From positions 7,316,001 through 7,380,000 of the forward strand of contig NC_043006.1 of NCBI RefSeq assembly GCF_006345805.1: 64,000 nucleotides of DNA. The letters run 5' to 3'. Both the position numbers and the translations under genes were made by a program. The notes beneath the pieces were generated by a model. It did not search any database. It saw nothing but the letters and a program-made list of their open reading frames with translations, and was not told the origin of the DNA. Positions 19,325-51,850 of the stretch are shown here, piece after piece (the stretch's first letter is position 1; every line of letters starts with the position of its first letter). The stretch is from Octopus sinensis. Lineage: Eukaryota.

Positions 19325-19642
19325 AAGCGTCGGACTTGGTAAACACCCACAAAGTTATCAACCACCTCACCAACAACAACACTGAACACCTTTTTGATCT
19401 CCATGTGTCTAACAGACGTGGACATGCCTACAAAGTCAGAAAACAACACAGCTCCCATGACTTTCGGAAACATTTTTTCACGCTCAGAGTTGCTGAAGCA
19501 TGGAATAAACTGCCTGCGTCAGTTGTTGACTGCCATGACACTGCATCCTTTAAGGCCCTCATGCTTTCCGAAATCCGCCGAAACTACACCTGATTATATA
19601 TACACTTTAGATGAGTTGTAGTGCACCTGAGCACTGTACACA

Positions 19643-19672
<30 letters not shown>
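19325..19672 (+). mobile_element. CR1-clade LINE 3' fragment
   Basis: ORF ..RGHAYKVRKQHSSHDFRKHFFTLRVAEAWNKLPASVV.. is a typical CR1 ORF2 C-terminus; short 3' UTR and (ATT)n tail. Confidence 0.85.
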
Positions 19673-34348: not shown

Positions 34349-34509
34349 ATTTAGCTGAACTGCTAAGCATCACGATTATTACGTTTATTGCATAATATAT
34401 CGATAAAATGTTGTGTGGGGGACTTTCCATTGCAAAATGTAATAAAAAATATTTTTACAGCTATTATATACAGCTATTAATATCATTACTATTATTATTA
34501 TTAATATTT

Positions 34510-34580
34510 TTCTTCTTCTTCTTCATCTTCTTCTTCTTCTTCTTCTTCTTCTTCTTCTTCTTTTCTTCTTCTTCTTCTTC

Positions 34581-34623
<43 letters not shown>

Positions 34624-34627
34624 CATA
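34510..34627. repeat. (CTT)n-(ATT)n compound microsatellite
   Basis: Direct inspection; abuts the 3' end of family E copy 1. Confidence 0.95.
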
Positions 34628-35181
34628 GAGTGAGCGAGCAGTGCATGCCATCAAAGTGACACTGGGGTAAAATATACGAAGCCCAGTATACCCATCATGA
34701 CTACCCATCTGATAAGGGTACAACAGGCACATGCATCACAACCATATGTGCGCGACATGGTGATCTCATATCAAGATAAACAGCACATGACCTTGCAGGT
34801 GGGCCCCAGTTAGAATTTTCTTCAGATCGAGTAACCCATCCCGCTCAAAAGGTCCCTGAATAAGGGTGTTTAAGGACGTTGAACGAAACACCCATGTTTC
34901 CAGAGGTGAATTATTCAAACCCCAAAGAATCCTTCTCAACACATGGCTATGATGCTCCCCCACTACTTCTGCTCGTGATCAGAGATGCACATATCGTCAG
35001 CCACTAAGGGACATGCTCAACTGGTTAAGGTCAAACAACTGACAAGCAAATCTGTGGTATTGAGCAGAATATTTGCTGTAGCCCATCTTTTATGCCAAGA
35101 CAAAACAATGTACATGATAACACTTCCAATCAGTTAAGATCAGAAGCCATGAGAGCCACTGCCTGGCACCGCATCAGGGCA
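34628..35181 (-). mobile_element. Family E: non-coding ~555-bp retroposon in (TAA)n, full copy
   Basis: Three copies in window, all with the same end (..GCACTGCTCGCTCACTC on minus) against triplet arrays; (TAA)n on both sides; no long ORF, no TIRs. Confidence 0.85.
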
Positions 35182-35249
<68 letters not shown>

Positions 35250-35661
35250 GGCGGCGAGCTAGCAGAAACGTTAGCACGCCAGGCGAAATGCTTAGCCGTA
35301 TTTCGTCTGCGTTACGTTGTGAGTTCAAATTCCGCCGAGGTCGACTTTGCCTTTCATCCTTTCGGGGTCGATAAATTAAGTACCAGTTACGCACTGGGGT
35401 CGATGTAATCGACTTAATACCTATGTCTGTCCTTGTTTGTCCCCTCTGTGTTTAGCCCCTTGTGGGTAATAAAGAAATAGGTATTTCGTCTGCCGCGACG
35501 TTCTGAGTTCAAATTCCGCCGAGGACGACTTTGCCTTTCATCCTTTCGGGGTCGATAAATAAAGTACCAGTTACGCACTGGGGTCGATATAATCGACTTA
35601 ATCCGTTTGTCTGTCCTTGTTTGCCCCCTCTATGTTTAGCCCCTTGTGGGTAATAAAGAAA
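35250..35661 (+). mobile_element. SINE family B, form with duplicated 3' part
   Basis: GGCGGCGAGCT head; same AAAGAAATA-GGTATTTCGTC junction (~35480) as the 21067 copy. Confidence 0.93.
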
Positions 35662-38152: not shown

Positions 38153-38685
38153 CTACGCATGTATTACTGTGTTACTGTGGTTGTGTTTGAGGAAGCGTGC
38201 TTATGGGAAATTGATATCGGATTTGTCAAATCTCAAAGCAACTAACGAACTCTTTCTAGTAGGAACAAATATCGAGATTTTTTATTGTCACTAGGAACTT
38301 TTATATTGCAGTAAAAAAAAAATGCATTTATTTGCTATAGTAAAAATATTTCTTTCAACAACGATAGAAGGACGATCAAACAACATATTGCTACTAATAA
38401 TATTAATTATATAGCAACTGTTCAAAAAAAAAACTATCAAGTCGCAACCTGTTTCAACTTGACTGCTGCCGACCCAAATTGTGTTCTACATTCCGCCATC
38501 AGTAATTCTATCCAGACAGTAATTACTTCTTTTATCTTTCTTTATTTGCTTCTCAATGAATAATACAGTGTCAAGCAATTCTGTTATCAAAATATGAACT
38601 ACGCATCATCATCATCATCCTCATCATCATCATTATTATCATAATAATAATAATAATAATAATAATTATTATTATTATTATTATT

Positions 38686-38997
38686 GAGTGAGCGAGCAGA
38701 GCATGCCATCAAAGTGACACTGGGGTAAAATATACGAAGCCGTCTGATACGGGTACACCAGGCACATGCATCACAACCATATGTGCGCGACATGGTGATC
38801 TCATATCAAGATAAACAGCACATGACCTTGCAGGTGGAGCCCAGTTAGAATTTTCTTCAGATCGAGTAACCCATCCCGCTCAAAAAGTCCCTGAATAAGG
38901 GTTGTTTAAGGACGTTGAACGAAACACCTATGTTTCCAGAGGTGAATTATTCAAACCCCAAAGAATCCTTCTCAACACATGGCTATGATGCTCCCCC
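38686..38997 (-). mobile_element. Family E, 5'-truncated copy in (TAA)n
   Basis: Near identical to the 3' part of copy 1 (from 34628 to ~34960) with a small deletion; truncation point joins directly to (TTA)n. Confidence 0.85.
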
Positions 38998-39068
<71 letters not shown>

Positions 39069-39071
<3 letters not shown>

Positions 39072-39443
39072 TAGTTTTATTTTTATAGCGTGCTCTCACT
39101 TCACTACCGAGCGCAGCTCTGTGTGCCTTGGGTATGTGCTGTGATTTGTTGTGATGCTCTGATTGTTATTGTATCGAAAGTGTTTTGCGTAGGATGTGCG
39201 CAGTGCCCAGTAGTGAAATTTTCTGTATGTTATATGTGTTTGTAAATCCTGGTGTTTTTGTTATGTATTTGTCTGAATATTTTTTTATCATACCTAATGC
39301 GCCTACTATGATAGGAATTGTTTCTGTTTTTAGATTTCACATTCGAGTTACCTCTATTTCCAGGTCTTTGTATTTTGAAAGTTTCTCCATTTCTTTTAGA
39401 GACACGTTTTCATCTGCTGGTATTGATACATCAATTTGAAATC

Positions 39444-39445
<2 letters not shown>
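39069..39445 (-). mobile_element. R4/Dong LINE, short 3' fragment (second subfamily)
   Basis: Minus strand reads IDVSIPADENVSLKEMEKLSKYKDLEIEVTRM*NLKTETIPIIVGALG..GTAHILRKTLS; ~100-nt 3' UTR unlike that of 46757; (TAA)n on both sides. Confidence 0.9.
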
Positions 39446-39503
<58 letters not shown>

Positions 39504-39553
39504 CATCATCATCATCATCATCATCTTCATCATCATCATCATCATCGTCATCG

Positions 39554-39590
<37 letters not shown>

Positions 39591-39594
39591 TATT

Positions 39595-40034
39595 GAGTGA
39601 GAGAACAGCGTATACCATCAAAGTGACACTGGGGTACAAATATACGAAACCTAATATACCCATCATGACTACGCGTCTGATAAGGGTACACCAGGCACAT
39701 GCACCACAACCGTATGAAATCATACTAGGTGGGGCCCAGTTATAAATTTCTTCAGGTCGAGTAGCCCAACCCGCTCAAACGGTCCTTGAATAAGGGTTTT
39801 TAAGGATGTTTCCAGAGGTGAATTATTTAAACCCCAAAGAATCCCTCTCAACACAATGCTATGATACTCTCCCACTACTTTTGCTCATGATCAGAGCAGA
39901 AACAGTGGTCAATTGGTTAAGGTCAACTGGTTGAGGTCAGACAATTGACAAGCAAATCTGTGGTATTCAGCAGAATATTTAAGAGATGAGGAATCATATA
40001 TGTATCAGGGCATCATAATGCGTACTGCATCAGG
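39595..40034 (-). mobile_element. Family E, older diverged copy with internal deletions
   Basis: Alignable from GAGTGAG.. to ..GCATCAGGG; left flank (CAT)n/(ATT)n. Confidence 0.8.
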
Positions 40035-40715
40035 GTATACGGGGAAATAAGTCGGGGTTGATAAAATAAGTACTTGTTGAACACTGAGAGAGGTATATTC
40101 GACATACCCTTTCTTCTAAATTGTTGGTCTTCCCAAGAAATTTAAATCATCTTCACCCTCATCATCATCTTCACCCTCATCATCATCATCATCGTCATCA
40201 TCATCGTCATCAGCATCGTCATCATCATCATCGTCGTCGTCATTATCGTCATTGTCGTCGTAATTATCTTCATCATGATATGGTGACTCATGTTTACTCG
40301 GGGTTTACTTTAACTGAGTATGTATCGAGTGTCACCTTACGTGGGTTCGAACGCCAGACTTGGTAGGTATATGCTAAATATTTTATATTTTCATTATATT
40401 TGCTTGAATTATTAGCACGTGTCGGAGAAAATACTGAATTTTAAAATTCCACCCAGATCGATTTTCCATTCCATTCTACGGATTCAATAAAATAAGTACC
40501 AGCTTAGCACGGCGGTCAATGTCACCGACTAGCCACCACACCACCAAAATTTCAGGCTATCTGCTTGGCTTGCCGTAACATGGGTTATATTCACGGAAAT
40601 AATTTTTTGGAAAATATAACGAATTTTATAGAAAATGTTTCACATCTAAGTGGAATATTGAATCTAGAATTATTCGGAAAATGTTTACAAATATACAGTG
40701 TAATTAAAATCCAAA

Positions 40716-43252: not shown

Positions 43253-44179
43253 TATATATATATATACGTCATATGTTATAATATTATATTATATTATCTG
43301 ATGCACAGTTTCTAAGTCTAAGACGATAGTGTCATAGTAAGGTGAGAATTAGCTGCTACTTCTAGCAAGTCTAATTATTACACCCCCGATCTGCATTTGC
43401 CCCGTTGTATTGGTAGTTTTTCTTTCTGTGTCAAGGTTTCGATGAAAAGAATGCCATAAAGTTTTCAGAAGCCTTATTTAATGTAGTGTTGTTACCTACA
43501 TTAATTAAATTTTATAATTTCATGCATATGCTGTTCTTAGTTTTTTTTTCTCATTTTCATTCTTTTTTTTTTTTTTATGAAATAATTAAATGGCGAAAGT
43601 GAACGATGTGCTGGCGGAGTATTTATTTCAAGAAATATTCAATGCATTAAGCAGCCATTACAATTAATGCTGAGCCTTTAAACTACATCGATGCTGCTTT
43701 GCTTAATTATGTTACAGTTCGTTCAATTGATGCGATCTGTCTGCTTCAATTACTCTATCAAATAACTTAAGCGTTGTTGTTCTTCTGCTTCAGTACTTCA
43801 CTACAAGCTCAATCTTGATCGAGCACATAAATGATCAAATCATTCCAGCCGTGGCTAACACGTCTCGTTCAGAGATTGGATATCCCTTCATTCAGAACTG
43901 CATACTTCTATCCGTTTGTAGGATTAGATTAGCTAATACAAAATTGCTTATTTAATGCGGTAAAATATAATACAGGGATTATCAGACTGAGATTACTAGT
44001 AAAGTGAGTGACCATCTATAGGTTGTCTTGAATTTTTAGAAAATTGTTTTCTCTGACGGGTCACAATCGAATTATATTTTCACATTATAACTAATCTGTT
44101 TATATGTCATTCTCAAACACAGACCACTATTTCTGCCTTCACCCTTGCTTTTATTTTAAAATCAGAAATAATTGCAATA

Positions 44180-46520
44180 TTCACCTTATCGTGTCTCTTT
44201 TTATATTCAATTTGTGCGAGCTTACGGCACTCACTAACAATATGGCTTATTCTTTCTTCCTTCTAAGTGCACATCCTACACTGTGGTGAATCAGTGCTTT
44301 CATCAATGTGATATTTGTAGTAGTTTGTTCTAAGCGCTTGCCTCAGTGGACCCTTTTAAATCTCCTTTCTGCAGCCATTACGAGGTACTATTCCAGTCAA
44401 CCTCATCGTTATTCTTCAAGAACTGACAGTGCCTTTTCTTGTTCTGCCAAATTCTCTTCATCTGCTCTCTCTGTTCTTTCTTACATTGTATTGGATCTAC
44501 GGCTTTGTTCCCTTTTAAGGTTCCCTACATTTTCACTGCTTCAATCATTTCTTTAATCCCCTTCACGTACCAAACCAGGCTATTCTCCTCTTCCCTTATA
44601 CAACCTTCGCAACACACTTATCCCCATCCTCCCTCCCTCCCTCCTCTTTACATACAATCTTGACATATCACTCTTGGGGTGTAGTTTTTTGTTCAATGTC
44701 TTTAATTTACGTTGTCTCCGGTCTTTCTCTTGTTATTCATAGGGAGCACTCCGTCGGTTACAACGACGAGGGTCCCAGCTGATACGATCAACGGAACAGC
44801 TTGCTCGTGGAATTAACGTGTAAGTGACTGAGCAATCCACAGACACGGTTACCCTTAACGTAGTTCTCAGGGAGATTCAGCGTGACACAGATTGTGACAA
44901 GGCCGGCCCTTTGAAAAACAGGTACAACTCATTTTTTGCCAGCTGAATGGACTGGAGCAACGTGAAATAAAGTGTCTTGCTCAAGGACACAACGCGTCGC
45001 CGGGAATTGAACTCACGACCTTACAATCGTCAGTCGAATGCCCTAACCACTAAGCCACGCGCCTTCACTATGTTATTCATACTTCCAGTTAGGAATCATC
45101 CCCTCACTTATTCTCCATTCCTCCTCTTTGAGTGTCTTTAACCATTATGCTTCACTTTCGTGTTGTTTCTCTTCAAAACATATATTTGAACAGAATCTTT
45201 CACTTTCTTCGGCATCCGACACGGCTTTTTCTTTCCCATCCAACTCCTGATGGACTCGTTTCTCATTTTCTTAATCTGTATTTTGCTCAATTTTCCGTTC
45301 ATATCTCTTTAGTTTATGTTCTTTATCTGTCAACCTCTGTTTTAATTCATCAATCACAACATTGATTCCCTTTCTCTTCACCCTCTACTCCCTCCCTCCC
45401 TCTCTAGCTCAACATATTTCTCTCGCCGAACTTCATTTCTCTTTTCCCGTTCCAAAATGTTAATATGCTTTCTGGTCTCATTAACAGATTGCGTTAATCT
45501 CCTTTTTCCATCATGGTTTTGTTAACATTTACCTTTGGCATTCACACCTAACATCCGGGCTATAAAGTTCGAGATTGCATTCATCAGATTCTTGGTGTCT
45601 GTGATGTTGTCAGTTCTGATATCGCCAATGATATCATTAATCTTCCTGACCCATTCATTGGGTTTCTTTCTGTCTGCATTTTTTTAAACACCGTATTAGA
45701 GCTCTGTTCATCAGAGGTCCAAATATCAATGATTTAATTTAAAAGGAATATTTATTCCTTGGTTTTCTCATCACTTTCCTGATCGATAATCTTAGCCTCA
45801 TGCTCTTTTTCTTCCTTTAACTCCACTGTTATGGTTTCACTGCATTCTCTTCCCTAAGCACCCGTCTCTTAATGCTTTCTAGTTCAACTGAAGATAACCA
45901 TTCATTCTTTCTTATGGCTCTAACTTGGCCTCACAGATTTTGTTCACTGCTCCATACTCTGTGCATTCTTTTCCTATATCCCCTAGCGGGCACTTCTTTA
46001 TTATTTCTCGGATGACCCAGAAACTAGCACTCTATAACAGCCACATTCATTTCTTTCGTCCACTTTGTTTTAGTAGTTGCTTAACGACGACTGGACCCAT
46101 GCTGCCTAGCCGTGAGGCACCCACCGGGCGAGAGACCTTCACAAGGAGTTCCAGTCGCATTCAGGCGTACTCATTTCTATTTTTATTTGACACTTCAGCA
46201 CTCATCATGAAAGTTAGTGAATTTTAGGTTGCACAGCCACCAGTATTTTTTAAACCCCGTGATACCATCACTAATAGGATCTCCATCCTAGGATATAGGA
46301 TTCCTGTGATCCTAATTTTTGAAGTTTTCGTCTCCTTTTCCCACAAATTTGTTGGTTTTGTGAAGGGGCCGGGCTTGATTGTCAGAGGACAGATTGTCAC
46401 CACTGTGACTAATGAGTCCTGTCTACCCCAGATTTTAAATCAGAGTATTCCTCCTCCTACACAGACTGCCAAGCAAGGCTCACGAGTTCTGTCGACTCGA
46501 CGGTTTCACAACTCCACTTG
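44180..46520 (-). pseudogene. Old decayed R4/Dong LINE with internal deletion of most of RT
   Basis: Minus-strand pieces KWTKEMNVAVIEC..GYRKRMHRVW..IRKNEWLSSVELE; ELKQRLTDKEHKLKRYE; HPKSDMSRLYV; CRMCT*KEERISHIVSEC..EYKKRHDKV, collinear with the 46757 element; interrupted by SINE C. Confidence 0.8.
44742..45070 (-). mobile_element. SINE family C, full length
   Basis: Matches 5673-5997; TSD TGTTATTCATA at 44731-44741 and 45071-45081. Confidence 0.93.
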
Positions 46521-46738: not shown

Positions 46739-46987
46739 TGCTGTTATTATTATTATTCTATGTTTGACTTTTGCTTTATATTTGTACAAGTTGGCTCCAA
46801 GTCTCACCCAGAGACCTCAAGAGACAACAGGGTTGGAAGTTCATGTTGTTGTTATGCCTAGTGTGCCATATATTTGGGGGGTGGGGATGTTGTACTAATG
46901 AATGTCTACAAAAAAAAAAGTTTTTTTTTTTTTTTTTTTTTTTGTTTTTTTTTAAACCGAAAATTATGGTTGTTTTAAACCTTGAGA

Positions 46988-49042
46988 TTACATAGAGAGT
47001 ATTTTGCGTAGGATATGAGCAGTTCCCATGAGCACTATCTTTTGAATTCCTGCCATTTTGGGGTTTCCTGGTATCTGAGTTAGGTAGCAATCAGTCCCTT
47101 TCGCTATCATTCCCAGGGCACCTATGACAACAGGTATTGTTTTAGTCTTCAGCTTCCACATTTTGCTGATTTCTATTTCAAGATCTTTATATTTGCTCAG
47201 TTTTTGGTAGGTCCTGACAGATACGTTTATATCGATTGGGACAGTCATATCAATGAGGATGCATGTTCTTTGTTTGAAGTCTTTCAATATGATGCCTGGC
47301 CTATTTGCATCTATCTTCCTGTCAGTTTGAATGGTGAAGTTCCAGAGGAGTGAGATGTGGTCATTTTCAAGCACTGGGGGTGGTTTGTGTTCCCACCAGT
47401 TTTTTTCATGGGGCAAATCCAGGTTTTTACAGATTACCCAGTGAATATATTGTGCAGCTCTATCGTGCCTGTTGAGATACTCTGTAGGCGCTAGAAGACT
47501 GCACTTGGAGACCACATGGTCAATGGTTTCATTTTGTTGCTTGCATACACGACACGTTGGACTGCTTCTGATCTTTAATATGTTGGCCTGGTAGTTTCTT
47601 GTTGGTAGGCATTGATCTTGAGCTGCTATGATAAACCCCTCTGTTTCAGATTTTAAGCCAGAGGCCATTAGCCATTGATGGGTCAGGGTTTTGTCGATAT
47701 CTGCATTATTCGCTCTCTTTGGGTATTTGCCATAGAGAGGTTTTTCTTGCCATTTATTATTCAGAATATCTAAGGCCGCAGTTTTGGCACGGGTTTTCAT
47801 GCGCCTAGCTTTTTCTGTGCTTGTTTCTTGTATGTCTATCTCTAATTCCGAAATTGGTTGTATTCGGAATTCACTTAGATATTCCTTTGCCTGTTTTGTG
47901 ACTGAGTATGATGCTTTCTTGTTTTCATGTTTTGAGACAAGTTTTAACATCCAGTCCTCAGAGTTTTTCAGGTAGGTGTCTAGGCCAATTGTAGCAATCT
48001 TCATTGTTATTGCCAGTTGCAAAAGACCACGGCCTCCCTCTTTTCTTGGCAGATAGAGTCGTTCTGTATCTGCCTTAGGGTGGTGCATTCTATGCATTGT
48101 CAACAGTTTCCTTATTTTTCTGTCGAGCTGACATATTTCAGTAATTGACCAGTTAACAATATTGAAACTGTAAGTCACGACTGGTATAGCTAATGCATTG
48201 ATTGCTTCGATCCTGTTTCTTGCATTCAGCTCTGTCTTGAGTATTGCTCTCACTCTCCGATAGCATTCTCTCCTGATCCTTTCCTTCATCTCTGAATGCC
48301 TTATTCCGTTCCCTTCAATTACCCCTAGGTACTTGTAGCTCTCCGCTGGGTCTAGTTCTTTTATGACATTCTGTTGGTCAAGGTTAACGTTAGATGTTTC
48401 TGTCATTTTTCCTTTGATAAAGGTAGCCTTTGCACATTTATCGAGGCCGAATTGCATTCTGATGTCGTCACTGAATTGTTTGACTATCGCTAGTAAGCCC
48501 TTGAGTTGTTGATCATTTTTTGCAAAAAGCTTTAAATCATCCATGTAAACGAGATGATTTATATTTTTATCAAACATTTTATACCCGTACTGCGCGTCAT
48601 TGAGCAGCTTTGAGAGAGGTATTAAGGATAAACAAAAGAGGAGTGGTGACAGTGAGTCACCCTGGAAAATGCCACACGAAATTTTTACATCACCAGCATT
48701 TAGGGATTCACTGTCACTGTTCAGAGTTAGTGTGGTTCTCCATGATCTCATACTTACAGTCAAGAAGTTTCGCAGAGTTGGTGCTATCTTATACATTTCA
48801 AGGCATTTCCTAATCCAGCTATGTGGTAGGCTATCAAAAGCCTTTTTATAGTCTATCCAGGCTATTGATAAGTTTTTGTGTCGTTTGTGACAATCTTCTA
48901 AGATCATCTTATTGATGAGTAGTTGGTCTTTACAGCCGTAGGATCCACGTTTACATCCTTTCTGTTCATTAGGGAATATGCTGCTGTCCGTTAAAAAACT
49001 ATAGGTATATTCCGTCAGGACAGATGTTAGTGTTTTGTACAT
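46988..49042 (-). CDS. R4/Dong ORF C-terminal 684 aa: reverse transcriptase, CCHC finger, restriction-like endonuclease
   Basis: WIDYKKAFDS, GIFQGDSLSPLLF, YMDD, GGRGL, CRVCKQQNETIDHVVSKC, RP(G)I..IDMTVP..KLSKY. Confidence 0.93.
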   Translation of the reverse strand: MYKTLTSVLTEYTYSFLTDSSIFPNEQKGCKRGSYGCKDQLLINKMILEDCHKRHKNLSIAWIDYKKAFDSLPHSWIRKCLEMYKIAPTLRNFLTVSMRSWRTTLTLNSDSESLNAGDVKISCGIFQGDSLSPLLFCLSLIPLSKLLNDAQYGYKMFDKNINHLVYMDDLKLFAKNDQQLKGLLAIVKQFSDDIRMQFGLDKCAKATFIKGKMTETSNVNLDQQNVIKELDPAESYKYLGVIEGNGIRHSEMKERIRRECYRRVRAILKTELNARNRIEAINALAIPVVTYSFNIVNWSITEICQLDRKIRKLLTMHRMHHPKADTERLYLPRKEGGRGLLQLAITMKIATIGLDTYLKNSEDWMLKLVSKHENKKASYSVTKQAKEYLSEFRIQPISELEIDIQETSTEKARRMKTRAKTAALDILNNKWQEKPLYGKYPKRANNADIDKTLTHQWLMASGLKSETEGFIIAAQDQCLPTRNYQANILKIRSSPTCRVCKQQNETIDHVVSKCSLLAPTEYLNRHDRAAQYIHWVICKNLDLPHEKNWWEHKPPPVLENDHISLLWNFTIQTDRKIDANRPGIILKDFKQRTCILIDMTVPIDINVSVRTYQKLSKYKDLEIEISKMWKLKTKTIPVVIGALGMIAKGTDCYLTQIPGNPKMAGIQKIVLMGTAHILRKILSM

Positions 49043-50777
49043 AGTTGTTAAGCAGGTTATGGGTCTATAGTTTTTGGTTCATTTGTTTCTTCACTTTTTG
49101 GAAGCAGGAATGTTAACCATTAACTAGCCAAGGAGGCATCCTACTAGGGTGTTGCAAAACATCATTGTACAGTTCTGTTAGCAGTTCATGGCTCTCTGGG
49201 AAGGCATTCAGCCAGAAGTTAGGAATTTTATCCTTTCCTGGAGACTTCCATTTGCTTGACCTCCTGAGAGCAGATCTTATATCTTCTACCTTGACACCAT
49301 CCCACTTTTGCTCTTCTAAGGGGTCCAGTTCTGTAGATATTCTGTCAATCCAGGGGGCCTTTTCGTTGTGTGTTTTTTCTTCTGCCCAGATTTTATTCCA
49401 AAATCTCTGCACTTCTTCTTTTGATGGTACAGACCCTGCAGTAAACGCTGTTTTTCCTATCTTCCTGTAAAAATTCTTGGTGTTATTTTTGAACATGTTG
49501 TTGTCCTTGAAAAATCTAACACGCTTTTCATACCTCGCTATGCGGGCAGCTTTGGCAGATACCTTTTGTTTGATGGTTTCTATGGTGGCATCAATATCAA
49601 GTATAGTTTTCATATTGTATTTTTTCAGTAATTTTTGGGTTTTTGTAGGTTTTTCAAATATTCAATGTCAGATCTAAATACTTTAATTTGTTGTTGCAGA
49701 CGCTCTTGCCAAGAAGGCTTTTTGTGGGACTGTTGCCGTTTTCTAATCTTTACACCACATAGGATCGTTGAGATTTTCGCGGATGCATAGTATAGGTGGT
49801 TGAGGTTTGTGATATCAACATCATTAACTGAAATTATATCCTTAAGTGCAAGCCGGATTTTACCAATTATTTTCATGTTTTGGTTAGAGTTGCGGATTTT
49901 AGGAAGTGTATCACGCTCATCCATGCTGGTTTCTTTAATTTTCAGCCATTCAATCATGATTTGATTTTTTAGCTCATGTAGTTCTGTTGGGTCAATATTT
50001 GTGTGACTTTCTTTATCTATTTGATGCTCATCTGTCTTAGTGTTTATGATTGGTTCAGGGCGTATTTCACTTTGCCTATCACTTATACTAACTCTTTCAA
50101 TCCTCTCTTCGTTTTTATCCGCCCTGGGCTGGTCTATAACCATTTCCTCTGTATTATCTTCTCTAGCTGCAGCTTCGTTCATTTTATCCGATATTGCTTG
50201 TCTAACCTGATCAATCTCTACTTCAGTCAGTAATTTCTTTTTTATAATGTTTCTTCTAACATTGGCAAGCTTGTTACTGTCTATGTAGGGTCTTACTTCA
50301 GGGTGTTTTTGTCTCCAGTTTAAGTATGCTTGTACAGTGCTAGACTTATCTGTGGGGAAATATATGGCATGGTAGAAGGCCTCAAGAACTTCTTTATTAT
50401 CTTCCCTAGACCATTTTTCCTTCTTTTTCTTTTGATTATTTGGTGATGAGCATGGATGGCCATCTGTTGGAATATTCCGGTTGTGGGGTTCGTCCAGCTC
50501 CTGTGTGTTGGGAAGATTTGATCCAGTAACTGATTTTTCAATCAGGATTTGGTTCAATTTTCGGGTACGTGGTCTTTTGTAATCCGCGCAATGACCAATG
50601 CGGTTTATTGTTTGATTTGTTGACCTGAAGCATGACGAGCATCCATTCTTATATTAGGAGATGGATCTGTCAGTTTAGGGTTCACTACATGTAAGCATTG
50701 CTCATAGCGCCGCTTCTTAAGACTAGCAGATCTATATCGTCTGTATTTTTTTTGTTGATAGTTTTATCTCCGGACAT
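49043..50777 (-). pseudogene. Frameshifted N-terminal part of the R4/Dong ORF
   Basis: Track ORFs 49625-50557 (KWSREDNKEVLEAFY..) and 49113-49613 (SPGKDKIPNFWL) join the RT ORF via single-base shifts; start at 50646 or 50777 is inferred. Confidence 0.8.
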
Positions 50778-50993
50778 TTTTTTTTTTTTCCTCCTTTTCC
50801 TCCTCTTCCTTTCTTCAAGGCTTACTGTGTCTGTATTAGTTCGAAATAATGAGAATAAAATACGGAGAAGGAAACGAAAAGAAAGGGAAAAAGACGGGAT
50901 CTGTCAGTTATTATTGTTATTACTATCATCTTCACCACCATCACCATCATCAGCAACATCACCATCACCATCATCATCTTCAATGTGTAGCCA

Positions 50994-51035
<42 letters not shown>

Positions 51036-51187
51036 GTTTTTCCTTCTTTCTTCAAATTTTCTTCCGTTTCTCGCCGAGCCTTTTCCATACACCTAGGGCA
51101 GAGAAGCTCATTGTATGCATTCGCAGATATTACACACGCAAATTCACAGATAAAATATGTATTTAAAAATTATATTATTATCATTGT

Positions 51188-51206
51188 TCTTCTTCTTCTT
51201 CTTCTT

Positions 51207-51302
<96 letters not shown>
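51188..51302. repeat. (CTT)n-(ATT)n compound microsatellite
   Basis: Direct inspection; abuts the 3' end of the 51303 R4/Dong fragment. Confidence 0.95.
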
Positions 51303-51304
<2 letters not shown>

Positions 51305-51850
51305 TTGTCTTTGCACAGCTTCTTAAGCTGCAGATGTACTACGGTGCCAGCTGCTCGCTACTAGTGAACGAACTTAACATCCCTTATTTTTCGAGCACCG
51401 TCCGGAGAATTCGAGCGGTTCCATGCAGTGCTGTTCTCCGCAAGTGCTCCACATTTATTGCAGACCACTTGTTCCATATATTTCTCAATATTTTTACTCA
51501 CTGTTCACAGGCCTCCGGAAATTCTTGGTACTGCTTCCACCTTTTTCAACGACCACAAATACTTAACCTCGCTACCTGACCTGTCATATCTCTCAGCTTT
51601 TCTTTCTTCCTTATCGCATGCGTTGTTGTCAGTTGGGCATGCTATATCTATGATCCAGCATCGTTTTGCTTTCTTCCTCAATTAACATTATGTCTGGTTT
51701 CCTATTTTCTATCTCATAGTCGTATTGAATCATAAAATGCCATAAGATCTCTGCGTTATCCTTTTCGATGATGCCTTCTGGTTTATGTTCAGTGGACAAT
51801 CCTTGCTATATTGCCATGACCATTCTTATATTCTCTCTGGCCTAGTGACG
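51303..51850 (-). mobile_element. R4/Dong LINE, decayed 3' fragment (third subfamily)
   Basis: Minus strand EHKPEGIIEKDNAEILW..RKPDI..IDIACP..GTARILRTVLEK* with frameshifts; 3' UTR ends at (TAA)n. Confidence 0.85.

What the first reader, a model, noticed from the sequence alone, without database searches (positions are those of the whole stretch)
34628..35181. Non-coding ~555-bp retroposon targeted to (TAA)n: candidate non-autonomous partner of R4/Dong
Seen: three copies (34628-35181, 38686-38997, 39595-40034). All keep one end, one is truncated at the other, and all abut triplet arrays reading (TAA)n or (TGA)n on the same strand as the four R4/Dong copies. There is no long ORF, no TIRs and no convincing tRNA A/B boxes. 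Established: R4-clade Dong elements target TAA repeats, and 5' truncation is typical of target-primed reverse transcription. Inference: an element of unknown RNA origin that borrows the Dong endonuclease/RT. By eye its 3' end shows no clear primary-sequence match to the three Dong 3' UTRs here, so recognition might be structural. I cannot tell whether it is already catalogued.
Basis: partly seen in the sequence, partly recalled or inferred. Interest (0 to 1): 0.8.

Follow-up and report, generated by a model that had tools for sequence, protein, structure and literature searches.

The report
Non-coding retroposon inserted in TAA repeats
A roughly 555-base non-coding mobile element sits three times inside TAA microsatellites next to Dong-type jumping genes and probably borrows their copying machinery, though it lacks the RNA hairpin those genes carry near their 3' ends.

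Summary
Three copies of one non-coding repeat lie on the minus strand at 34628-35181, 38686-38997 and 39595-~40036. All three keep the same 3' end (...CTCGCTCACTC) followed by (TAA)n or (TGA)n. One copy is 5'-truncated. The two long copies share a 5' terminal motif, which points to a discrete unit of about 555 nt rather than a fragment of a longer element.

The repeat has no conserved ORF, no Rfam match, no tRNA or pol III boxes and no terminal repeats, and its sense strand carries three T4 runs. Three restriction-like-endonuclease LINEs of Dong type sit in the same or nearby TAA arrays, in the same orientation and with the same tail junction.

The most likely reading is a non-autonomous, target-primed retroposon aimed at TAA arrays and copied by a Dong-type enzyme. 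Partnership with Dong is circumstantial. The element shares no sequence with the three resident Dong copies. It also lacks a covarying 3'-UTR hairpin that I found in Dong-like elements from many organisms, and that is present in two of the three resident copies.

No copy outside the window could be retrieved, so copy number, catalogue status and the partner remain open. This is a new member of a known kind, of moderate interest.

The parts
34628..35181 (-). NA1, the full-length copy (554 nt) of the non-coding element. Its 5' end is TGCCCTGATGCGG... and its 3' end is ...CTGCTCGCTCACTC.
34475..34627 (-). 3' tail or target of NA1. On the minus strand it reads TATGA(TAA)14, then (GAA)n, then short (TAA)-like units.
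35182..35248 (-). (TAA)22 array abutting the 5' end of NA1, the upstream half of the target array.
38686..38997 (-). NA2, a 5'-truncated copy (312 nt, 90% identical to NA1) that keeps the 3' end.
38641..38685 (-). 3' flank of NA2. On the minus strand it reads (AAT)7 followed by (TTA)8.
38998..39068 (-). (TAA)23 array. It is both the tail of DongB and the 5' flank of NA2.
39069..39445 (-). DongB, a 5'-truncated Dong-type LINE (last 88 codons plus 3' UTR). It has a weak match to the conserved 3' hairpin at 39096-39141.
39446..39594 (-). Compound array between NA3 and DongB. On the minus strand it reads AATAA(TGA)~30(TAA)19.
39595..40036 (-). NA3, an older copy (75% identical, several indels) with the same 3' end and a recognisable 5' head motif at 40036. 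Its 5' flank is not a TAA array.
46758..50994 (-). DongA, a near full-length Dong-type LINE. The reading frame is broken, but RT, CCHC and restriction-like endonuclease parts are recognisable. The conserved 3' hairpin lies at 46786-46830, and TAA arrays flank both ends.
51303..51800 (-). DongC, the 3' part of a divergent Dong-type LINE, followed by (TAA)22(GAA)17 at 51187-51302.

Best explanation
The repeat is a non-autonomous retroposon of about 555 nt, with no protein of its own. It is copied into (TAA)n microsatellites by target-primed reverse transcription.

The most likely enzyme donor is a Dong-type (R4-clade) LINE carrying a restriction-like endonuclease. Inferred steps: the endonuclease nicks the TAA array, the (UAA)n 3' tail of the element's RNA pairs with the nicked strand, and the reverse transcriptase copies the RNA from its 3' end. 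Early stops give 5'-truncated copies.

Shown here: the copies, their orientation, the retained 3' end, the truncation, the TAA flanks and the neighbouring Dong copies.

Inferred: that Dong supplies the enzyme, how the RNA is recognised, and how it is transcribed. It is probably not made by RNA polymerase III, because the sense strand holds three T4 runs.
For: - Three independent copies share one 3' end followed by (TAA)n/(TGA)n on the sense strand. One is 5'-truncated.
- The two long copies share a 5' head motif (12/16 matches; 19 of 20000 shuffles reach this), so the unit is discrete.
- Two of the three 5' ends also abut arrays of 22 or more TAA units, while such arrays cover 0.8% of the window.
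- Three LINEs with TAA tails lie in the same orientation, one of them inside the same array as NA2 and NA3.
- DongA's product aligns with solved R2 proteins through the RT and endonuclease regions (E 4e-24) and with ~1190-aa homologues from residue ~6.
- Tail junctions match: NA2 and NA3 read N|AATAA..., as do DongA, DongB and DongC. In 26 outside Dong-like loci the tail starts AAT (13) or ATA (13) and never TAA; NA1 starts ATA.
- Compound TAA/TGA/GAA arrays follow NA1, NA3, DongC and an outside element, L002.
- No coding remnant: tblastn with four full-length Dong-like proteins finds nothing in the element.
- From the literature: Dong elements target TAA repeats (PMC3812793), and R2, another site-specific LINE of this endonuclease type, has short non-coding parasites called SIDEs (PMC3774820).
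Against: - There is no nucleotide similarity to any of the three resident Dong copies at either end.
- The element lacks the covarying 3'-UTR hairpin found in most Dong-like elements. Its best score is 4.8 bits, against 24.1 for DongA and 10.5 for DongB.
- Folding of the last 60-100 nt is no better than shuffles, and three copies give no covariation.
- No HDV-like 5' ribozyme was found. My descriptor also found none at the defined 5' end of intact element L003 and only two off-end matches in L002, so this test has no positive control.
- NA3's 5' side is not a TAA array.
- Only three copies were seen, and no copy from elsewhere could be fetched.
Confidence: 0.6

Rival explanations
1. The copies are 5'-truncated 3' ends of an autonomous TAA-specific LINE lineage that is absent from the window and has a 3' UTR longer than 555 nt. 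On this reading there is no separate non-autonomous element.
For: The three resident Dong lineages all have different 3' UTRs, so further lineages with other 3' ends are likely. If the host is an octopus, which is unverified, several active Dong-R4 families are reported (PMC13282606). The 5' similarity between NA1 and NA3 is weak apart from the head motif.
Against: The resident Dong 3' UTRs are only about 100-230 nt long. A 554-nt truncated copy of such an element should therefore still hold the well-conserved endonuclease coding region, and tblastn finds none. NA1 and NA3 share the 5' terminal motif at the expected place (p about 0.001), and NA1's 5' end abuts a clean (TAA)22 array.
Confidence: 0.15
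2. The element is moved by a LINE of another clade that makes microsatellite tails (for example RTE-like). The TAA arrays would then be its own tail plus an AT-rich cleavage preference, not Dong targeting.
For: RTE-type LINEs and their short partners end in microsatellites (PMC5786205). The window holds a LINE C-terminus at 19336-19593 (+) with an (ATT)10 tail.
Against: That LINE's sense-strand tail is ATT, not TAA, and it has no similarity to the element. Two 5' ends lie in long TAA arrays, which fits insertion into the array. One copy sits directly downstream of a Dong tail.
Confidence: 0.12
3. It is not a retroposon at all. It is a solo LTR, a DNA-transposon remnant, or a piece spread by DNA-level duplication of microsatellite-rich DNA.
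For: On the + strand NA1 ends in CA, and in NA2 and NA3 a T of the repeat precedes GAGTGAG, giving a nominal TG...CA. Target duplications cannot be read inside a microsatellite.
Against: There are no terminal inverted repeats and no LTR-retrotransposon interior nearby. NA1 itself lacks the TG. Flanks are unrelated. The truncated copy abuts a clean TAA array, as expected from an incomplete reverse transcript. All three copies have the same polarity relative to the repeat strand.
Confidence: 0.05

Closest known systems
R2 SIDEs (short internally deleted elements; Eickbush & Eickbush 2012, as described in PMC3774820)
   Same: Both are short non-coding parasites of a site-specific LINE with a restriction-like endonuclease. 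Both are found at the same target and in the same orientation as the LINE.
   Different: SIDEs consist of the LINE's own 5' ribozyme plus its 3' UTR. This element matches neither end of any resident Dong copy, lacks the conserved Dong 3' hairpin, and shows no detectable ribozyme.
Dong / R4-clade LINEs (Bombyx mori Dong, DongAg, DongBg; TAA-specific)
   Same: Shared features are the (TAA)n target, the sense-strand TAA tail, the tail junction, 5' truncation and nesting inside each other's tails.
   Different: The element has no reading frame, no coding remnant and no shared UTR sequence or hairpin.
Classical SINEs (tRNA, 5S, 7SL or snRNA head plus LINE-derived tail)
   Same: Both are short, non-coding, LINE-dependent and keep a fixed 3' end.
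   Different: The element has no small-RNA head and no A or B boxes within 2-3 mismatches at sensible spacing. It has three T4 terminator runs on the sense strand, and its tail is not visibly derived from a resident LINE.
RTE-type non-autonomous elements with microsatellite tails (Bov-tA, AfroSINE and others; PMC5786205)
   Same: Both have a microsatellite 3' tail. Some RTE-type partners are built from UTR pieces without a small-RNA head.
   Different: Those are dispersed, not inserted into arrays of their own tail repeat. No RTE-like sequence matches this element.

Membership tests
LINE-dependent (target-primed) retroposon | All copies keep the 3' end and a simple-repeat or A-rich tail, while 5' ends vary | tested here: met
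   3 of 3 copies keep ...CTCACTC plus (TAA)n/(TGA)n. NA2 is truncated at element position ~223.
LINE-dependent (target-primed) retroposon | No terminal inverted or long terminal repeats, and independent insertion sites | tested here: met
   No terminal inverted repeats; flanks unrelated.
LINE-dependent (target-primed) retroposon | Target-site duplication | not testable with these tools
   Insertions lie inside microsatellites, where a duplication cannot be read.
Dong-type (TAA-specific) insertion | Inserted within (TAA)n with TAA on the element's sense strand | tested here: met
   The 3' side is met in 3 of 3 copies and the 5' side in 2 of 3. Arrays cover 0.8% of the window. NA3's 5' side is unique DNA.
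Dong-type (TAA-specific) insertion | Tail junction in the register used by Dong elements | tested here: met
   NA2 and NA3 start AAT and NA1 starts ATA. Resident Dongs start AAT. In 26 outside loci the counts are AAT 13, ATA 13, TAA 0. This is weak evidence (chance about 0.3).
SIDE-like derivative of a Dong element | 3' end derived from the partner's 3' UTR | tested here: not met
   No similarity to DongA, DongB or DongC. The conserved-hairpin model gives no more than 4.8 bits. Other Dong lineages of the host could not be examined.
SIDE-like derivative of a Dong element | 5' self-cleaving (HDV-like) ribozyme | tested here: inconclusive
   A strict descriptor gives no hit on the minus strand. 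A relaxed descriptor hits 93% of random starts. Rfam gives nothing. Neither method finds a ribozyme at the 5' ends of the outside Dong-like elements L002 and L003, so there is no positive control.
Classical pol III SINE | Head derived from tRNA, 5S, 7SL or snRNA, with internal A and B boxes | tested here: not met
   ARAGORN finds none. Rfam at E<=10 finds none. The best box matches have 2-3 mismatches at unsuitable spacing.
Classical pol III SINE | No internal T4 terminator on the sense strand | tested here: not met
   TTTT occurs at element positions 77, 332 and 510.
5'-truncated autonomous Dong | Coding remnant of the endonuclease or RT upstream of a short 3' UTR | tested here: not met
   tblastn with four ~1190-aa homologues hits only the four LINE loci. 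All six frames are full of stops.
Solo LTR | TG...CA ends, a short target duplication, and related full-length elements | tested here: inconclusive
   TG...CA exists only if a T of the repeat is borrowed, and NA1 lacks it. The duplication is unreadable. No interior is present in the window.

The most novel reading that the evidence does not exclude
The element is a 'tail-only' parasite of Dong. The Dong reverse transcriptase would accept an RNA that lacks its own conserved 3'-UTR hairpin, provided the RNA ends in (UAA)n that can pair with the nicked TAA target. That would make microsatellite-specific LINEs of the restriction-like-endonuclease type relaxed in template choice, unlike R2, and able to spread unrelated RNAs into TAA arrays.
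Probability: 0.25. Interest if true: 0.6.

Novelty: new member of a known kind. Interest (0 to 1): 0.4.

Why it matters
Non-coding parasites are well documented for R2 among site-specific LINEs with a restriction-like endonuclease. I found no description of one for the TAA-specific Dong group, although my literature search was limited. If this element really rides on Dong without sharing Dong's 3' UTR, it bears on how these enzymes choose their RNA template: by a structured 3' UTR or simply by a tail that pairs with the target. It also bears on how TAA microsatellites grow into nested clusters of mobile elements. The conserved Dong hairpin found along the way gives a concrete handle for that question.

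Tried and rejected
- **Finding more copies.** I searched a 70-aa stop-free translation of the element in the 5.8-billion-protein collection and found nothing. Exact 22-mer scans of metagenome and prokaryote genome contigs found nothing. A look-up of the DongA product found it not on record. The best Dong homologue is only 65% identical, so the host genome is not in these collections. Locus L001, fetched through a homologue, comes from another organism with no element or SINE match.
- **Small-RNA origin.** Rfam at E<=10 gave only low-complexity miRNA-like chance hits outside the element. ARAGORN found none.
- **HDV-like ribozyme.** The strict descriptor gave nothing on the element strand. The relaxed descriptor is uninformative, hitting 93% of random starts. 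There is no positive control in the outside elements.
- **Shared 3' structure by folding.** Energies of the last 60-100 nt are not better than shuffles for any element. RNAalifold on three copies shows no compensatory change.
- **Host identity.** Literature searches for the SINE and element sequences as text strings found nothing relevant. An octopus origin is only my recollection of the SINE at 35249-35661 and is not verified.
- **Literature on a Dong partner or a Dong 3' hairpin.** Nothing was found, but searches on 'Dong' are swamped by author names.
- **Plus-strand orientation of the element.** Rejected, because only one of three copies would then keep its 3' end and tail.

Full report
**The repeat and its boundaries**

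The window is AT-rich (35% GC) animal-like DNA, full of microsatellites and retroposons. BLASTN of 34628-35181 against the window returns itself plus two more places: 38686-38997 (90.4% identity, E 8e-136) and 39595-39980 (75%, E 2e-92). With these three masked, a sensitive search finds no further fragment of the element and no similarity to anything else in the window.

The alignment shows one common end. On the minus strand all copies finish ...CCCCAGTGTCACTTTGATGG(C/T)AT(G/A)C.CTG(C/T)TC(G/T)CTCACTC. They then run into AATAATAA... (NA2), AATAA(TGA)n(TAA)n (NA3) or TATGA(TAA)14(GAA)n (NA1).

NA2 stops at element position ~223, directly against a (TAA)23 array. NA1's other end abuts (TAA)22. 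Sequence outside the microsatellites is unrelated between the loci, so these are separate insertions. (TAA/TTA)n arrays of 5 or more units make up 0.8% of the window.

**Orientation and unit length**

Only on the minus strand do all three copies keep their 3' end and tail while the 5' end varies. That is the signature of target-primed reverse transcription. On the plus strand two of three copies would have lost their 3' end.

NA3 diverges from NA1 upstream of NA1 position ~107. The first 16 nt of NA1 (GCCCTGATGCGGTGCC) nevertheless recur at 40036 in 12 of 16 positions. Only 19 of 20000 shuffles of that 165-nt stretch do as well, and no other place in the window matches. The two long copies therefore share a 5' terminus, which argues for a discrete unit of about 555 nt (about 440 nt in the older NA3). 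NA3's 5' flank is not a TAA array; it is about 15 nt of unique DNA and then an old SINE fragment.

**What the element is not**

- All six frames are full of stops. The longest ORF (65 aa) is frameshifted or deleted in the other copies.
- tblastn with four full-length (~1190 aa) Dong-like proteins hits only the LINE loci, never the element.
- Rfam at E<=10 and ARAGORN give nothing in it.
- The best matches to A and B boxes have 2-3 mismatches at unsuitable spacing, and the sense strand has TTTT at positions 77, 332 and 510. A polymerase III origin is unlikely.
- There are no terminal inverted repeats.

**The neighbouring LINEs**

DongA (46758-50994, minus strand) has a 684-aa open frame with an RVT_1 domain (E 1e-22) and a zinc-binding motif. 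It aligns with solved R2 proteins from the RT through the C-terminal endonuclease region (E 4e-24). With two frame breaks it aligns with ~1190-aa homologues from residue ~6. TAA arrays flank both ends.

DongB (39069-39445) is the last 88 codons plus the 3' UTR of a related element. DongC (51303-~51800) is the 3' part of a divergent one. Both are followed by long (TAA)n arrays. A fourth RT remnant (44179-44831) has no TAA tail.

These are restriction-like-endonuclease LINEs with TAA tails and targets, as described for Dong (PMC3812793). No phylogeny was made. Read 5' to 3' on the minus strand, one array contains NA3 - (TGA)n(TAA)n - DongB - (TAA)n - NA2 - (TAA)n. The element and a Dong copy are thus nested in each other's tails.

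**Testing the link to Dong**

There is no primary similarity between the element and DongA, DongB or DongC at either end.

The host genome is not in the collections, since the best protein hit is 65% identical. One metagenome scan returned 80 Dong-like loci from many organisms, and two full-length contigs were fetched as well.

Their 3' UTRs share a hairpin 39-61 nt upstream of the TAA tail. Its form is: outer stem, YTA, GG-NNNN, a loop of about 5 nt (often TGGKT), NNNN-CC, C, GG plus the outer stem.

On 21 such sequences 88% of cells pair, against 59% after shuffling. There are 85 cells with changes on both sides, against 27, and versions slid by 1-3 columns reach at most 46%. The inner stem was picked by a hairpin-seeking script, which biases it. 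The outer stem was not selected for, yet it pairs in 80% of cells with 6 of 7 pairs covarying.

A covariance model built without any window sequence (R1) behaves as follows:
- Across the fetched loci it gives 35 hits, all on the sense strand. About 11 of them were not used to build the model.
- In the window, the two best hits are DongA 46786-46830 (24.1 bits, E 7e-5) and DongB 39096-39141 (10.5 bits, E 1.4, at the expected place).
- In the element the best score is 4.8 bits with no inner hairpin.
- DongC reaches only 6.1 bits.

The element therefore does not mimic this hairpin. Not every Dong lineage has the hairpin either.

Plain folding of the last 60-100 nt shows nothing better than shuffles for any element. 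Three copies give no covariation.

**The 5' end**

B. mori Dong and R4 carry an HDV-like ribozyme that cuts exactly at the TAA/5' junction. R2's non-coding parasites keep that ribozyme plus the 3' UTR (PMC3774820).

I found no such fold at the element's 5' end with a strict descriptor. A relaxed descriptor is worthless, hitting 93% of random starts. Neither my descriptor nor Rfam finds a ribozyme at the 5' ends of the outside Dong-like elements. This test is therefore inconclusive.

**Weighing the readings**

Strong evidence supports the element being a non-autonomous, target-primed retroposon aimed at TAA arrays. The evidence is the retained 3' end and tail, the truncation, the shared head, TAA on both sides in two copies and the absence of coding capacity.

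Weaker, circumstantial evidence points to a Dong-type enzyme as the mover. This rests on the same target, the same polarity, the same tail junction (AAT or ATA start; never TAA in 26 outside loci), the same compound TAA/TGA/GAA tails and nesting with Dong copies.

Two findings count against a simple 'derived from Dong' origin: the lack of any shared sequence and the lack of the conserved hairpin. Two explanations remain. The partner may be a Dong lineage absent from the window, which is plausible because the three resident lineages already differ from one another. Alternatively, recognition may rest mainly on the (UAA)n tail pairing with the nicked target.

The main rivals are a long 3' UTR of an unseen autonomous lineage (0.15), another LINE clade with microsatellite tails (0.12), and not a retroposon at all (0.05).

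**Novelty**

Short parasites of site-specific LINEs of this endonuclease type are known (R2 SIDEs). I found no published Dong counterpart, but I could not check Repbase, Dfam or the host's repeat library. A recent octopus annotation lists hundreds of unclassified SINE families and five active Dong-R4 families (PMC13282606). If the host is an octopus, which I could not verify, the element is probably already an anonymous consensus there. I rate it a new member of a known kind, with moderate interest. Interest would rise if tail-only recognition were shown.

Noticed in passing
window 46786-46830 (-), 39096-39141 (-); loci L001-L083 (e.g. L002 4086-4130, L003 337-380 and 4381-4424): Dong-like LINEs from many organisms share a strongly covarying 3'-UTR hairpin 39-61 nt upstream of the TAA tail (outer stem, YTA, GG-NNNN, loop, NNNN-CC, C, GG). 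88% of cells pair against 59% after shuffling. Model R1 gives 35 hits in the fetched loci, all on the sense strand. Rfam has no match for it in L002 or L003. It is a likely reverse-transcriptase recognition element, and I found no description of it.
   Followed up: partly
loci L004-L080 and window Dong tails: The first repeat unit after the unique 3' end of Dong-like elements starts AAT (13) or ATA (13) and never TAA (0 of 26 distinct junctions). This suggests a fixed priming register on the TAA target.
   Followed up: partly
window 50663-50675 and 50897-50909 (-): An exact 13-nt direct repeat, AACTGACAGATCC (none expected by chance), brackets about 220 nt in the 5' UTR of DongA. It may be a small insertion with a target duplication, in which case the original 5' end would follow the TAA-like run at about 50910.
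   Followed up: partly
window 35249-35661 and 40051-40105 (+): Both long copies of the element have a SINE, or an old SINE fragment, within 70 nt upstream of their 5' end and antisense to the element. This SINE covers only 2.7% of the window. It could be coincidence, a shared site preference or something else; it is unexplained.
   Followed up: partly
window 19336-19672 (+): A C-terminal piece of another LINE (...RVAEAWNKLPASVVDCHDTASFKALMLSEIRRNYT) ends in an (ATT)10 tail on its own sense strand. A second LINE type with a trinucleotide tail, complementary to TAA, therefore lives in this genome.
   Followed up: no
window 44179-44831 (-): This is a degenerate RT/CCHC remnant, 35-46% identical to Dong-like proteins, with no TAA array after it and an A-rich run near 43545-43580. 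It is probably an old or different LINE, not a fourth Dong with a TAA tail.
   Followed up: partly
L003 1-430 and 4160-4511: In this outside contig two copies of a Dong-like element lie head to tail, separated only by (TAA)4. This shows reinsertion into the tail of a previous copy, the same nesting seen in the window.
   Followed up: no
window 34628-35181: CpG observed/expected in NA1 is 0.38, against 0.89 for the whole window, although NA1 is more GC-rich (46% against 35%).
   Followed up: no
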